Shown: positions 1 to 11,439 of the stretch, in pieces
Position numbering within the stretch: the first letter of the stretch is position 1
Layout: each line of letters opens with the position of its first letter
Assembly (NCBI GenBank): GCA_965644495.1
Contig: CBFFSA010000007.1
Coordinates: forward strand, 682,001-746,000
Length of the DNA: 64,000 nucleotides
Origin: Perkinsela sp. CCAP 1560/9
Lineage: Eukaryota; Protista; Euglenozoa: Kinetoplastea
Direction of reading: 5' to 3'
Position numbers and translations under genes: made by a program
The notes under the pieces: generated by a model
What the model saw: only the letters and a program-made list of their open reading frames with translations
What the model was told of the DNA's origin: nothing
Database searches by the model: none

Positions 1-1222
1 CGCTCTTAAGCTCGAAGACGGACTCCACCGTCGTCCCCTTATCCACTTTGTAGACCATGTAGTTGCGCTTCCTCGTTCCGTAAGACGTCATCACCTTGAG
101 ACCCAGCAGACTGCGCGGCCCGTTCTTGTTGAGGTAGTCCAGCGCAGTTACACGTGCTTCCACATGACTTCGAGGATGAACAATGAGAACAACACCGTTG
201 TCTGTCAACTGGAATGTTGCAAAGTAACCAGGTACCACAATCATATCGCGATACACACGTTGCCGAGTGAAATCGCAGTATATTTTTCCTGTTCGGCGAA
301 GATCTAATGATTCCAGAATTCGGCATAACACATGATTGTACACTTGCATCGTTTGTTCCTCATTAGAGCGGGGGTTGAGTTGCACCTTAGTGATGTCTTC
401 TTTGCGTAGTTCCATTGTGGTCTTGAAAGATCCAAGGGAGACTTCACGTGAAAGCGGTTCTTGCAAATGTTCGGAGATATCCTCAAGGCAATAAAAGTTA
501 GTTCCAGAGATGATCAAATCGAGCTTCTTGAGGTATTCCTTTTCTAAGACTTGGCGAAGATATCCGAATAGAAGCTTCTTACGTTGAATTTCGCTGATGT
601 TTTCATTTTTCTCGATGCTGAGGGGATACATGTAGACCTCCGCCTTACTGATGGAGACATTGACAGCATTCCACATTACGTCGCGGCATGGTGCACGCTG
701 ACGGAGGGCGTCACGTTCGGATGCCATCAAACGACCACGTTCCGTCCTGTCTTTATCAGCCCAGAAACGATCCCAACAGCCACTGCAACAGCGTTTATTG
801 GGGACGTCCGCATGCTTTCCTACTCGGCATAACTTACCACAGCTGTCGCATTTGGCGTACTCGCTCCCAATGAAGGGCATCATGCTTCCGGTGCCCGGAC
901 CACCTCCCATGGGACCGCCCATCGGACGGGGACCACCGGGTGCACCACCCGGAGGGCCACCTGGTCGTCCTCCAGGAGCTGGGCCACGATCGTCTCTTCG
1001 GTAGTTGTCGTTTCGGCGATCATCGCGGCGGTTGTCATCCCGGCGATAGTCTTGGCGCTGGTCACGCGAGCGATCGTCCCTGCGATAGTCGTCGCGACGG
1101 TCATCGCGTCGATAATCATCACGACGGTCATCGCGCCGATAATCATCACGACGATCATCGCGCCGATAATCATCGCGCCGGTAGTCGTCACGTCGGTAGT
1201 CGTCGCGTCGATTGTAACTCAT
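1..1222 (-). CDS. PIWI/Argonaute-family protein, 5' part (runs off the left edge; absent from the ORF track)
   Basis: Manual translation from ATG at 1222 stays open to the window edge (~407 codons): MSYNRRDDYRRDD...; N-domain-like DVMWNAVNVSISKAEVYMYPLSI; QVYNHVLCRILESLDLRRTGKIYCD; L1-like VVPGYFATFQLTDNGVVLIVHPRSHVEARVTALDYL; PAZ start LLGLKVMTSYGTRKRNYMVYKVDKGTTVESVF. These follow the Piwi order QxYNxxxRxxxxxLxLxxxGRxYYD / PGYxTSI / LIGxIVLTxYNNxTYRIDDID. Confidence 0.85.
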   Translation of the reverse strand, partial: MSYNRRDDYRRDDYRRDDYRRDDRRDDYRRDDRRDDYRRDDRRDDYRRDDRSRDQRQDYRRDDNRRDDRRNDNYRRDDRGPAPGGRPGGPPGGAPGGPRPMGGPMGGGPGTGSMMPFIGSEYAKCDSCGKLCRVGKHADVPNKRCCSGCWDRFWADKDRTERGRLMASERDALRQRAPCRDVMWNAVNVSISKAEVYMYPLSIEKNENISEIQRKKLLFGYLRQVLEKEYLKKLDLIISGTNFYCLEDISEHLQEPLSREVSLGSFKTTMELRKEDITKVQLNPRSNEEQTMQVYNHVLCRILESLDLRRTGKIYCDFTRQRVYRDMIVVPGYFATFQLTDNGVVLIVHPRSHVEARVTALDYLNKNGPRSLLGLKVMTSYGTRKRNYMVYKVDKGTTVESVFELKS

Positions 1223-1925
1223 AGAATTTGGTTAAAAGTAGTTAAATTTTCAGGTTCCGTTGTATGTCCTTGTTGTATCTGACATACAACAATTAGGACA
1301 TAATGTCCGAGAAACGACTTATTGATGTTGCATGTGATTAAACAGAGAAACTATGGGAGACTTTTATACATTCAGCGAATTGTGGGTTAAGTTGTTTCAT
1401 ATCAGCGAATCACTACAAGAGTAATCATCATGGAATTTTCTGGAGATACGTGGAAACAGTGTTTCATTGTGACAACCGGTCATCTACAGACTCTCCATTG
1501 CATTTTTATCCCCCCAGACCCTTTTTTCATTCATTCTCGAGCCAGCAATCCTTCGGAGGTTTCACCTGCTTCGGATTCCGCTCCTTCGATTTCAAGTCCT
1601 TCAATCAAGACTTCCCCAAGTCAGCGAGATCGGATCGCAATCCCTGGACATAGCTACAACAATAATTGTTGTAATATTAATTGGTTAAAAGTAGCTAAGA
1701 AGAAAGAAATTAGTGACAAAGTTTATTGAAATTGTTCATGAGATGAAACCACAGGACCTTTTGAAGCTGAGTGAGCCGGCATAAAATATGGGAAATACAT
1801 GTATGCATAGACCATGAGGCTGGTATAGAAGGCGAGTGTGCACTGTTTGGATGTAGTGCGTGAGTTTTTATTGTAGTGGCATGGGCGAAATGAATCTTCG
1901 GGAAATGTACAGAAGTTCCATGTAG

Positions 1926-7520: not shown

Positions 7521-8469
7521 TTTTTTTTCCTTCAGCCCCCGAGCCCATTAGCGCACGCCCCTACGGTACCAATTTTGTACCGCGGCATGCGCTATCTGGG
7601 CGTTCCCCTTTTGGATGGCTACCCCGATTGCCATGATAAAGTGGCTGAGGCAACCATTCTTCTCGCCTGTGGCCTTCCGAGCGACCAGATTTAGAAACTG
7701 GGGGGTCTCGGGGACGGGGACACCGTACGTGGTGAAGGCCAGCGGGAAGAAATCCATCTTCCTGGCCCCCGCCATTTCTTCGTGAGTACGCCTTTTGAGG
7801 CGTTCGGCCTGTCTCACGGTGAAGGAGGGGTCTGCTGCCTCCTTGTCCACATAAGACGGTGCCAGTGGGTTCACCACCGTCACGTCTACGAGGACGAGCT
7901 TCCGCCCCAAAAGGAAACAGATGTCCGGTCCCCGCCCGTTGTCGAACCTAGGTTCGACTAGGTCCGGGGAGAATCCGTACTGGGTCAGTAGGTTCCTGAA
8001 GGTTTCCTTAACCCCCTTATGGCGAGAGGCCTGTGTCTTGCCACGAAACTTTTTGCAATCCATGGCATGGACGCAGAAATCCTCGTTTTTGAGGGCTGCG
8101 CCACACACACATTGGATCTCAGGTTCGGAGGTGGGGGCCACCATGTACCGGAGCCTAGCGGCGGTCTCCTATTCGGGATCCCGCATGTAGTACTCCGGCC
8201 TGTTCGGCCACGCGTTCATCCACTTGGTGGAGTGGGTGTTCTGGATCTGTCGCATGCAGACCAGATGCGTGGCCGACGGTGCCTTGTCCATAGCCGCCGC
8301 CCCATAAGCGCTGCTCCCTGGCTGGGGTGCCAGGGGATCGGCCTTGTAAGGCCTTGACGGCTTTGGCCTGCATGTCCTCCGCCTTGTCTTCGAAGGGGAT
8401 GGTGCCCAGGAAGTCCGCCGTAAAAAGTTTGTTTGCGAACGGCGTCGTTCCTATTGCACCCATCCCCCC
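7521..8469 (-). mobile_element. 5'-truncated CRE-clade (SLACS/CZAR-like) non-LTR retrotransposon relic with REL endonuclease
   Basis: GGMG (RT thumb end), a frameshift near 8350, then KWMNAWPNRPEYYMRDPE*ETAARLR, CCHC knuckle CVCG..HAMDC, RH...VEPR...GPD...VDVTVV...AERLK...FFPLAFTTYG...IQKGNA. An A8 tail sits ~20 nt after the stop (T-run 7521-7528). Confidence 0.88.
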
Positions 8470-9306
8470 TATAGTTTATAGTGTTTCAAGAAAATGTGTA
8501 GTACTATTAACCTCGTTTATAGTACTATAAACACTATGTAGTACTATAAAAACTATATGGTGTTTATCAGTGTTTCATGTCCAGAAAGGCGCGCGGTAGA
8601 CAGATCGGTCGATGGACCTGGAGGAATTTCGCGGGGCAGGAGAGAGCCGATGAAGGTGTAGAGGCTTAGAGGGGTCACGTGATGTCAGGTGGAGCAAGTG
8701 GTGTGGATACGCTGACGCGTAGAAAAACGTGAAAAGAGTTGTAGTTTTTGTGCAGAAATGGAAAAAGACGGGATCCTATAGCTCACAACACGCATTACAG
8801 TTGTCCTTCAACGAGTTCCCGTTAGATCACTCGTTGAATCCTAGACGTGGCGTATTCAATGGCAAGATAAAACACAAAAACACATCGCAGAGCCTGCAAG
8901 ATTCAATATCTGCAAAATTCATAATCTTTTGAAGAAATTTGAAGAATCACTTACCCGCTATTTCACATTTATACATTATATTTCGGCAGGAAAGGCGACC
9001 TAAAAAGACAAGGCGTTTGGGCTGGAACACATCTGAAATTAAAGTAGGCGGACTTCCCCATCGACCTCAACGAAGTGTGAAACCACGACGCTTGTTGAGC
9101 ATAATGATGAGAAAAATAGTGAGAAATCTTTCAAGAAAACGGGAGGGATAAAAATAAATTGCGTCGAGTCGGCATTTCAAGCAAAACGTTCAGAAAAAAT
9201 TTACTAAGAAAAATAGTAAAAAATATAGTTTTTATATATAGTGTTTCAAAGTTTATAGTACTATAATAGTACTATAAAATAGTTTTTGTAGTTTTACGGA
9301 CCTCTG
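8470..9306. mobile_element. hAT-like non-autonomous element, copy 1 (left TIR lost)
   Basis: 8470-8790 is near-identical to 33950-33978 + 34640-34928. 9197-9306 matches 35740-35840 and ends in the TIR TAGTTTTACGGACCTCTG. Repeated TAGTACTATA subterminal palindromes are present. Confidence 0.85.
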
Positions 9307-9481
9307 GATGAAACAATTCAGGTTCGGGGTCGGTTCGCCTGGGTTCGCCTGGCGCAATCTATTCCCCTTCTACTAATTCTTATTTATTACTTTTTTATTA
9401 ATTCGTCCTTTTTATTCGTTTTTCTGTTTTTTAATGTATGTATTGAATACATACCTTATTCTAATATATCTATCATATTAA

Positions 9482-10290
9482 ATGTTGCAAGACAGCGACA
9501 ACTGCAACATCATTAAGGAACTGTACGGAGTTCCTATTGATGGGACTATTCTTCTTGAAGCATTAGTGCTCATGTCACAGGCTCGTGATACAGGGCTATT
9601 GTTTCATGAAAATGCGTCCAAAACGTCGCTTTGTCGGGTGAAGGAGAAGAATCTTACAAACACTTGCATGCATCCGTACCATCACCGGTACCTCCGACCC
9701 CTTTTTATAACAAGAATATAACATAAAAAGATCAACAACATCTCCCTAAAGCTCCTGGCTCAAAGCTTGAATGCGAAGCAACAATACGCAATCCGCGTAC
9801 ACACACCTTCAGAGACAGGTGAAGCTGTAAAATTGTTTGTTAAAAAGGTGGAGGAGGTTATTCAGACGTGGCTGGGTCTGCTTACGGCAGAGAAAATCGA
9901 GCCGGCTCGCCTTCCTATTAAGAAAGGGGGATTGCGATTGACTTCGCGTACTAACATTAGAGAGGCGGCATATACTTGTAATACTTCGCTTCATATGACA
10001 AAAGAGCGCCAAAATTCCTTTTCTGCTCGTGCCAATGGAGTGAGGGGCAACGGAATTCTCAACGCCGGTAACTCCCACGATCTAGTACCACCAACACACG
10101 ACAAGAACAATCGCAGCGATATACCACGACGAAGTACTAAAGATCATAGAGAAGGACCCATTCATCTCCAAGATCCTAAGGGCAACGACGATAAATGGGC
10201 CAGAGCGAGACATTCCTGCATCCAAGCGCGAAGCTGAGGTACGAAGTGTGCTTCGAGGAAAGGTTGCGAGAACTGGCGGTAATTTTTTTT
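9482..10290 (+). pseudogene. Second CRE-like reverse-transcriptase relic (thumb/C-terminal region)
   Basis: KQQYAIRVHTPSETGEAVKLF...WLGLLT...ARLPIKKGGLRLTS...REAAY matches the CRE-type LPxxxGGLG motif. It contains stops and frameshifts. Confidence 0.7.
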
Positions 10291-11439
10291 CTCCACCCTC
10301 AAAAGATAGAGTGGTTTTTTTGGTCAAGGGGCACCTTATTGCATTACCTAAGGTGCAGGGGCATGGCACACCCCACCTCCCTATCTTAGTGCTGCTGCTG
10401 TGACGTCAGTAGGGCACCTAGGCTCACCTCCGTAGGGCACCGCAAAAGCTATATTTTTGTAGCTGGCTCACGCAGCGAAAAGCACTCTTTTTGGAACCTT
10501 TCGAGGTATTTTTTTCGTGTCTGTGTAGATGACTCGTCATCTTCATGGGCGCCTACGTCCCGCTGATACAGGCTTCGGTACCAGAGAGGGATGAGACCAC
10601 ATCGCTTCGGCGACAAACAGTCCATTTTGAACATTGAACCGGCACCTCCATACTGCAAAGAAATTTTCCATGATACTGGAGGTTTTCTCCGTCTTCCAGT
10701 AAAGACTTCACTTCTCAGAGCCAGAAAAGTTTGCAGCTAACTTTGAAAAACACGCCAAGTAGAAATCGCCATTGGTTTCAATGGGATTCGGTCGGTTCGC
10801 CTCGGTTCGCTTCGGTCCGTCCAGGTGACGTTTTTTTAAGTTTCACCCCTCTAAATCTTCTTGTACATCTAGGCCCCCTGGATCAGTTCCCCTTCGGATC
10901 CCCGCGCACATTGCGGAAAGACCCCCCCCGTTGAAGCACGGCAATCCCCATCCTCAAATTCAGAAATTAACCACGAGGCTTAGGAACCAACTCCTATTTC
11001 AACATCATCATTTCCTCCGCGGACACAAGTGGAGCGAAAGGACGCCGCTGATACTCGTCGTAGGCGTCGAGTAGACGCCTTGGATTTTGCGTCTAGTGCG
11101 GTGCAAATGCATCTAAAGCGGAAGGAACGGGGCGGCAACAAAATGCTACAGAAAGCAAGGATAAAGAAAAACTTCGAAGAGGAACTTTGGGCTAAACTGA
11201 AGCAAAATTCGGTTTTTTCGTTTTTTTCATAAATCTGTTCAAAAATTGTTCAAAAATTGTTGAAAAACTTAAACTGACAACTTTAGGCTTAAAAAGCGGA
11301 CACTGTACATATACGCAAGCGCAATGCTCTTTTAGATTTTCAAGCACGCGCAACAAAGCATCCCCCCCATTACACTTCAAACTTCCGCTTCCCTGCTCTG
11401 CGTAGGCCTGCACCCGATCTTCTCTCCGGGCCCCGAGAC

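What the first reader, a model, noticed from the sequence alone, without database searches (positions are those of the whole stretch)
1..1222. Hidden PIWI-like Argonaute with (Y)RRDD repeats and a putative N-terminal zinc finger
Seen: an unlisted open frame from 1222 to the window edge with N, L1 and start-of-PAZ motifs in Piwi order. These are preceded by ~75 aa of RRDDY/RRDD repeats, a Gly/Pro linker and KCDSCGKLCRVGKHADVPNKRCCSGCW (CxxC...CCxxC). Known: trypanosome AGO1 and animal Piwis carry RGG/RG/RA methyl-arginine tails, and zinc fingers are not part of the standard Argonaute architecture. Inference: a distinct Argonaute type using a mixed-charge condensate-type tail and a metal-binding module, possibly the effector of an undescribed small-RNA pathway in this lineage.
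Basis: partly seen in the sequence, partly recalled or inferred. Interest (0 to 1): 0.85.

Follow-up and report, generated by a model that had tools for sequence, protein, structure and literature searches.

The report
Zinc-finger Argonaute of a kinetoplastid endosymbiont
A Perkinsela-like kinetoplastid (a trypanosome relative living inside an amoeba) has an expressed small-RNA-binding Argonaute protein with an extra, conserved zinc-finger-like module that no solved Argonaute has, and it has lost half of the usual RNA-cutting residues, so it probably silences transposons in a modified way.

Summary
Confirmed. The frame 1222→1 (−) is the first 407 residues of an intact, intron-free 970-aa Argonaute (PAZ 62 bits, Piwi 115 bits), present in three 99.2–99.7% identical copies among transposon remnants. 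Near-identical public contigs carry a spliced leader and poly(A), so it is expressed. The genome looks like Perkinsela (inferred). The Cys module is a CxxC-x17/18-CxxC motif, invariant in four full-length relatives (43–65% identical) and as conserved as the core domains. AlphaFold models it as a treble-clef finger plus long helix (pLDDT 93–95) in front of the N domain, where no solved Argonaute aligns; none of 88 other long Argonautes carries it. The clade includes free-living Apiculatamorpha. The Arg/Asp tail is less special: one relative lacks it and unrelated Argonautes have similar tails. The guide-binding pocket is intact but the slicer tetrad reads D-K-D-S (the most distant relative keeps DEDH). 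Two PIWI-domain insertions link it to trypanosome AGO1 and amoebozoan proteins rather than animal Piwi; trees are unresolved. Best reading: the Prokinetoplastina counterpart of AGO1, silencing retroelements, with a lineage-specific finger. Zinc binding, guides and Dicer are untested. Other first readers of this scan noted the other copies in this genome.

The parts
2..1222 (-). 5' part (codons 1–407) of an intact 970-aa Argonaute gene; the CDS continues beyond the window's left edge to G000:C7:680310 (rest of PAZ, L2, MID, PIWI)
1223..1258 (-). 34-nt 5' UTR (1256–1223) and spliced-leader acceptor; the genomic dinucleotide before the junction is GG (1258–1257), not AG
   Evidence: Contigs L037–L039 begin with a non-genomic SL 3' end joined at this point; SL-like motif in the genome
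986..1222 (-). Residues 1–79: (Y)RRDD mixed-charge low-complexity tail (32 R, 29 D, 9 Y; net +3), mixed synonymous codons
   Evidence: similar tail in the 62%-identical orthologue L019, absent in L020
884..985 (-). Residues 80–113: Gly/Pro linker (RGG-rich in orthologue L019)
773..862 (-). Residues 121–150: predicted C4 treble-clef zinc finger; ligands C125 (850–848), C128 (841–839), C146 (787–785), C149 (778–776); W150 and W154 also invariant
   Evidence: invariant in 4 of 4 full-length clade members; AF2 hairpin–hairpin–helix, pLDDT 93–95; weak matches to A20, ZAD, ZZ, LIM fingers
698..784 (-). Residues 147–175: long helix that starts in the second CxxC and leads into the Argonaute N domain; 50–65% identical across the clade over 157–176
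143..694 (-). Residues ~177–360: Argonaute N domain and linker L1 (boundaries approximate)
   Evidence: structural alignment to Piwi/Ago chains starts here; phmmer to PIWIL1 from residue 289
2..118 (-). Start of the PAZ domain (Pfam match 369–449; residues 369–407 lie in the window)
1223..1680 (-). About 400–460 nt of upstream DNA that was duplicated together with the gene in the other two copies
   Evidence: self-BLAST of C7:645000–696000; upstream comparison

Best explanation
This is the main small-RNA effector Argonaute of a Perkinsela-like kinetoplastid and the type member of a clade that includes Prokinetoplastina and stands in the place of trypanosome AGO1. Shown here: intact, expressed, three copies; MID pocket residues Y634, K638, Q649, K676 and a PAZ domain retained; slicer tetrad degenerate (D704-K755-D815-S943); a conserved four-cysteine module plus helix in front of the N domain. 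Inferred: it loads 5'-phosphorylated small RNAs made from retroposon and repeat transcripts, as TbAGO1 does for ingi, SLACS and CIR147, and base-pairs with their RNAs. Because Glu and His are lost, it silences mainly by binding and recruiting decay or translation-blocking partners, or by a weak non-canonical cut as in trypanosome AGO1, whose tetrad is also degenerate. The finger most likely binds one zinc ion, packs on the Argonaute body and serves as a protein- or RNA-contact surface; it predates the loss of catalysis, since the most distant relative has both finger and DEDH. The Arg/Asp tail replaces the RGG tail of AGO1 as the disordered segment for granule or ribosome association.
For: Full domain set and fold. 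Only match to T. congolense AGO1 in the genome, E 3e-22; the only other Piwi-domain gene is a divergent 922-aa protein without PAZ hit. Distance between the two catalytic Asp positions is 98–111 in this clade, 103–111 in the AGO1 group, 110–114 in the group holding the amoebozoan Arcella protein, but 70–74 in animal-type Piwi; the CTL motif follows the same split. AU test does not reject one clade with AGO1 (p 0.074). Spliced-leader and poly(A) contigs with two different 3' UTRs, so at least two copies are transcribed in a close strain. Fragment in free-living Apiculatamorpha spiralis, 57% identical. Finger 39–70% identical across the clade, the same range as N, PAZ and MID. The locus lies among IS30-like and DDE transposase frames; Perkinsela has ingi-type retroposons (PMC5601477). 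TbAGO1 pathway: PMC3359990. Arg/Asp repeats condense: 10.1101/771592.
Against: Trees do not group the clade with AGO1; it is a long branch whose place changes, and a grouping with animal-type Piwi is not rejected either (p 0.41). Sequence scores to amoebozoan-type proteins exceed those to AGO1. No Dicer-like gene was found; all RNase III matches are single-domain editosome-type proteins, though these profiles also missed those editosome proteins, so the search is insensitive. No HEN1 or RdRP match. No small-RNA data. Zinc binding and docking of the finger are predictions; I could not read the model's coordinates.
Confidence: 0.6

Rival explanations
1. A separate Argonaute paralogue running a Dicer-independent, piRNA-like or otherwise new small-RNA pathway; AGO1 and the Dicers were lost in this lineage and the finger is a built-in cofactor (in the role GTSF1 plays for animal Piwi) or recruits a nuclease or chromatin factor.
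For: Best PDB matches by sequence and fold are Piwi proteins; long separate branch with full support; no Dicer found; degenerate tetrad needs a partner for target destruction.
Against: Shared insertions with AGO1; Dicer searches are insensitive; the finger matches no CHHC/GTSF1 structure and coexists with an intact DEDH in L020.
Confidence: 0.22
2. An ordinary AGO1-type protein in which the finger and helix are only a structural cap that stabilises the N domain, with no partner or regulatory role; cysteines might hold another metal.
For: Confidence of the module rises from pLDDT 71 alone to 93–95 in the full model, as expected if it packs on the body; no functional family match.
Against: Other Argonautes fold without it; surface residues around the second CxxC (W-x3-W-x-D-x-D) and along the helix are invariant over 57% divergence.
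Confidence: 0.13
3. The gene came from the amoeba host (contamination or endosymbiosis-related gene transfer).
For: The assembly holds an AT-rich amoeba-like rDNA contig; the next-best protein hits include an amoebozoan (Arcella) protein.
Against: The gene is intron-free, sits on an 894-kb contig beside kinetoplastid editosome genes, is trans-spliced, and has 57–65% relatives in free-living Apiculatamorpha and other samples, against about 26% to the amoebozoan-type proteins.
Confidence: 0.03
4. A decaying relic: RNAi is being lost in this reduced symbiont and the copies are by-products of transposon activity.
For: Half the tetrad is lost; no Dicer found; copies lie among transposon remnants.
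Against: All three frames are intact, transcribed, 62% identical to an orthologue over all domains, and the MID pocket is intact.
Confidence: 0.02

Closest known systems
Trypanosomatid AGO1 (TbAGO1; here T. congolense TCIL3000_10_9140, P0107)
   Same: N-L1-PAZ-L2-MID-PIWI; low-complexity Arg-rich N-terminal tail; the two PIWI-domain insertions and CTL motif; intact MID pocket; degenerate tetrad with Ser at the last position; sole match in this genome.
   Different: Only ~24% identical; no zinc finger in AGO1; tail is (Y)RRDD instead of RGG; tetrad D-K-D-S versus D-E-G-S; not grouped together in the best trees.
Animal PIWI-clade proteins (MIWI, MILI, Siwi, EfPiwi)
   Same: Best PDB matches by sequence (E 4e-31) and fold (Z 33–36); similar L1/PAZ and C-terminal motifs.
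   Different: Lack both insertions and the finger; keep DEDH; their zinc-finger activator GTSF1 is a separate CHHC protein.
Amoebozoan-type protist Argonautes (e.g. Arcella intermedia A0A6B2KY93, P0020)
   Same: Highest-scoring hits outside the clade (E 1e-47 to 1e-57); share both insertions and CTL-type motif.
   Different: About 26% identical; DEDH intact; no finger in those sequences (several are incomplete at the N-terminus).
Treble-clef C4 zinc fingers followed by a long helix (A20 finger of Rabex-5, ZAD, ClpX zinc-binding domain, ZZ, LIM)
   Same: Knuckle hairpin, loop, helix starting at the second CxxC; CxxC-x17-CxxC spacing.
   Different: All matches are weak (Z ≤ 4.3; Foldseek E ≥ 1.7; TM about 0.6 over 60 residues); no sequence family match, so no function can be transferred.
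PIWI-tryp (PWI1)
   Same: Kinetoplastid Piwi-domain protein.
   Different: That role is probably filled by the separate 922-aa gene on C11 and C21 (no PAZ hit, altered MID pocket); no BLAST similarity at 1e-5 to this protein.

Membership tests
Long eukaryotic Argonaute | PAZ and PIWI domains above Pfam cut-off in one frame | tested here: met
   61.8 and 115.4 bits
Long eukaryotic Argonaute | N-L1-PAZ-L2-MID-PIWI fold | tested here: met
   AF2 pLDDT 90.9, pTM 0.90; Z 30–36 to Ago/Piwi over residues ~175–970
Long eukaryotic Argonaute | MID 5'-phosphate pocket (Y, K, Q, K) | tested here: met
   Y634, K638, Q649, K676
Slicer-active Argonaute | DEDH/D tetrad | tested here: not met
   D704-K755-D815-S943; orthologues D-R-D-G, D-K-D-H, D-E-D-H. 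The Glu position lies beside a variable loop, so its alignment is the least certain of the four.
Trypanosome AGO1 | One clade with AGO1 in a tree | tested here: inconclusive
   not grouped in quick trees; AU p 0.074
Trypanosome AGO1 | Shared PIWI-domain insertions and CTL motif (my own diagnostic; also in amoebozoan-type proteins) | tested here: met
Trypanosome AGO1 | N-terminal RGG domain | tested here: not met
   no RGG in the first 250 residues; orthologue L019 has a short RGG linker
Trypanosome AGO1 | Works with DCL1/DCL2, RIF4, RIF5 and Dicer-made siRNAs | tested here: inconclusive
   no Dicer by four searches that are shown to be insensitive; no trypanosome DCL or RIF query was available
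Animal-type PIWI clade | Short D1–D2 spacing without the two insertions | tested here: not met
   111 versus 70–74 residues
Animal-type PIWI clade | One clade with Piwi proteins in a tree | tested here: inconclusive
   AU p 0.41
Animal-type PIWI clade | Binds Dicer-independent, 2'-O-methylated piRNAs | not testable with these tools
   no small-RNA data; bacterial Hen1 profile found nothing
C4 treble-clef zinc finger | Two invariant CxxC pairs, first in a knuckle, second at a helix start | tested here: met
C4 treble-clef zinc finger | Binds one Zn2+ | not testable with these tools
Any named zinc-finger family (A20, ZAD, ZZ, ClpX, CHHC/GTSF1) | Significant sequence or structure match | tested here: not met
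   Pfam best E 2.7, PDB best E 0.06, Z ≤ 4.3

The most novel reading that the evidence does not exclude
An undescribed Argonaute subfamily of early-branching kinetoplastids with a built-in zinc-finger cofactor, which in the endosymbiont has become slicer-dead and runs a Dicer-independent small-RNA pathway from Arg/Asp condensates.
Probability: 0.17. Interest if true: 0.85.

Novelty: new variant of a known kind. Interest (0 to 1): 0.6.

Why it matters
Eukaryotic Argonautes almost always have only a disordered tail before the N domain. A folded, conserved zinc-finger module there is a new architecture and gives a concrete surface to test for partners. The clade also shows stepwise loss of the slicer tetrad (DEDH, DKDH, DKDS or DRDG) among close relatives, a natural series for asking how a kinetoplastid Argonaute silences without canonical catalysis, which is still unclear for TbAGO1. 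It shows that a highly reduced endosymbiont kept, expresses and amplified an Argonaute; the Perkinsela and Prokinetoplastina genome papers I could read do not mention RNAi genes. It also informs the ancestral kinetoplastid RNAi set.

Tried and rejected
Word-based homologue searches found only the two closest relatives and nothing further for the finger. The ESM Atlas gave no usable hit for the finger. Pfam and PDB profile searches with the finger alignment gave only chance-level hits (vicilin, cytochrome c, nucleocapsid). The finger profile found no other gene in this genome. The RNase III gene next door (window 4106–1926) was considered as a linked Dicer and rejected: it is a single-domain editosome endonuclease-like protein (best hit MP61). 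Assembly artefact for the three copies is unlikely: they differ by substitutions, have different flanks, and two 3' UTR types appear as transcripts. Laying Logan contigs showed the gene in five runs but none on record as RNA, so it does not show expression. In the first tree I labelled P0076 and P0146 as AGO1-like by guess; that was wrong and was corrected. The careful tree did not finish; trees are quick-mode, on the C-terminal 760–800 residues, leaving out most animal Piwi hits and short fragments. Matveyev et al. 2017 (PMC5744689) and Burroughs et al. 2014 were not held, so prior mention of this gene there cannot be excluded.

Full report
Observation. In the whole genome the frame continues to a stop at G000:C7:680310 and encodes 970 residues without introns. 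PAZ (61.8 bits) and Piwi (115.4 bits) both pass the Pfam cut-offs, so the stated refutation test is passed. Two more intact copies lie 13 and 24 kb away, 99.2–99.7% identical in DNA, with 4 and 7 amino-acid differences. IS30-like and DDE transposase frames lie between them.

Organism. The window's genes are intron-free and include two editosome-type proteins. The assembly holds two SSU rRNA types, one AT-rich and amoeba-like and one kinetoplastid-like by my reading of the sequence. Three public contigs 99.6–99.8% identical to the gene start with a non-genomic spliced-leader end, joined 34 nt before the ATG at a GG acceptor; two end in a short poly(A), and they carry two different 3' UTRs matching different copies. 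Non-AG acceptors are typical of Perkinsela (PMC5601477). I infer a Perkinsela-like endosymbiont of an amoeba; no tool named it. The transcripts confirm the start codon and expression in a close strain.

The finger. A search of 1.84 billion representatives gave a tight group of close relatives, then a gap. Three are full-length over this region: L019 (62% identical), P0164 (65%) and L020 (43%, itself spliced-leader-capped), plus a 57% fragment from the free-living prokinetoplastid Apiculatamorpha spiralis that does not reach the N-terminus. In two of them the gene caller had cut the finger off by choosing a later start, which may be why it has gone unnoticed. All four keep C125, C128, C146 and C149 (CxxC-x17/18-CxxC), W150, W154, D156 and D158; the extra C145 and H137 vary, and a fifth Cys sits at 132 or 133. 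Identity over the finger (39–70%) equals that of N, PAZ and MID. AlphaFold gives a knuckle hairpin, a second hairpin and a 29-residue helix beginning at the second CxxC, at pLDDT 93–95 in the full protein against 71 alone; the rise suggests packing on the Argonaute body (inference). Fold searches return treble-clef fingers (Rabex-5 A20 Z 4.3, ZAD 3.3–3.5, ZZ, LIM, ClpX), all too weak to name a family. Fifty solved Argonaute and Piwi chains align only from about residue 175 onward. None of 88 other long hits has two CxxC motifs in its first 300 residues, and the finger profile scores none of them. Zinc binding itself is a prediction.

The tail. Residues 1–79 are 77% Arg plus Asp with net charge +3 and mixed codons. 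L019 has a similar tail followed by an RGG linker, so it is maintained. L020 has a Gln/Pro/Ala/Gly tail instead, and two unrelated Argonautes among the hits have Arg/Asp-rich tails. Arg/Asp repeats form condensates in other systems (10.1101/771592), so that role is plausible but untested, and the tail is the less distinctive feature.

Guide pocket and catalysis. The MID residues Y634, K638, Q649 and K676 are intact. The tetrad positions read D704, K755, D815, S943; relatives read D-R-D-G, D-K-D-H and, in the most distant member, D-E-D-H. The finger is therefore older than the loss of catalytic residues. T. congolense AGO1 is also degenerate (D-E-G-S), and TbAGO1 still drives target decay and relies on the RIF4 exonuclease for passenger removal (PMC3359990), so a broken tetrad does not mean no function.

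Which family. PDB hits by sequence and fold are Piwi proteins. However, the clade has an extended hairpin after D704 and a 22–34-residue loop at the Glu-finger position, which lengthen the D1–D2 distance to 98–111 residues. The same insertions and a CTL-type motif occur in the AGO1 group (103–111) and in a group holding an amoebozoan protein (110–114), not in animal-type Piwi (70–74). Quick trees give the clade full support on a long branch, with unstable placement; AU tests reject neither union with AGO1 (p 0.074) nor with animal-type Piwi (p 0.41). T. congolense AGO1 finds only these three copies in the genome. The other Piwi-domain gene (922 aa, C11 and C21) lacks a PAZ hit and is probably PIWI-tryp (identification from my knowledge, not tested against the trypanosome sequence). 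The genome thus has the usual kinetoplastid pair, with this gene in the AGO1 slot. Tandem Piwi copies are known from Diplonema (PMC10161547), so the triplication is not unusual.

Pathway partners. RNase III profiles found no Dicer but also missed the five editosome-type RNase III proteins that a direct query found; absence is not shown. RdRP and bacterial Hen1 profiles found nothing; the RdRP search had no positive control.

Mechanism. Most likely (0.6) the protein binds small RNAs from retroposons and repeats and silences their transcripts with little or no canonical slicing, the finger providing a contact surface and the tail providing granule or ribosome association. Architecture, expression, pocket and tetrad states are shown; guides, targets, zinc and partners are inferred. 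The main rival (0.22) is a separate, possibly Dicer-independent pathway.

Novelty. No held paper contains both Perkinsela and Argonaute; the Perkinsela and Prokinetoplastina genome papers do not mention RNAi genes; a 2025 survey of 17,461 Argonautes does not mention zinc (PMC12477606). Two relevant reviews were unavailable. I rate it a new variant of a known kind, interest 0.6.

Noticed in passing
window 4106-1926 (−): 726-aa protein with a U1-like zinc finger and one RNase III domain, best PDB hit editosome MP61 (E 5.5e-6); four paralogues elsewhere (C8, C7, two adjacent on C3). A KREN-type editing endonuclease directly upstream of the Argonaute, not a Dicer.
   Followed up: yes
window 61385-60474 (−): 303-aa KREPB7-like editosome protein (E 1.4e-26 to PDB 9z0h_B).
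   Followed up: partly
G000:C11:35628-38396 and C21:113017-115785 (L012, L013): Second Piwi-domain gene, 922 aa, two copies differing at 4 residues with the same neighbours; probably PIWI-tryp on two haplotypes or a duplicated segment.
   Followed up: partly
L016:1709-2656 (G000:C7 ~671700-672650): Intact 315-aa IS30-like transposase (HTH_38 plus rve) between two Argonaute copies; a DDE_3 transposase frame lies in L015:4413-5444.
   Followed up: partly
L017 (G000:C58:31267-36372): AT-rich (32% GC) rDNA contig unlike the 51% GC rDNA on C11; probably host amoeba DNA left in the assembly.
   Followed up: partly
window 1223-1240 and ~1677-1694: A short motif (CTACTTTTAACCAA core) occurs just before the ATG and again about 450 nt upstream, near the edge of the duplicated unit.
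   Followed up: no
window 7548-10369: Fragmentary frames resembling site-specific non-LTR retroposons (Cys/His motif and PD-like endonuclease motif); no Pfam hit for 8144-7551. Possible small-RNA sources.
   Followed up: partly
L023/L024 (ENA ERZ25333188): An unrelated, unnamed protist has two tandem identical 1096-aa Argonaute calls with long Arg/Asp/Gly tails and a degenerate Glu position (P0043), grouping near AGO1.
   Followed up: partly
G000:C3:214246, C5:790775, C9:532533, C12:255060, C21:14576: Five dispersed spliced-leader-like motifs on different contigs; the transcript leader differs from the commonest genomic one at one position.
   Followed up: no
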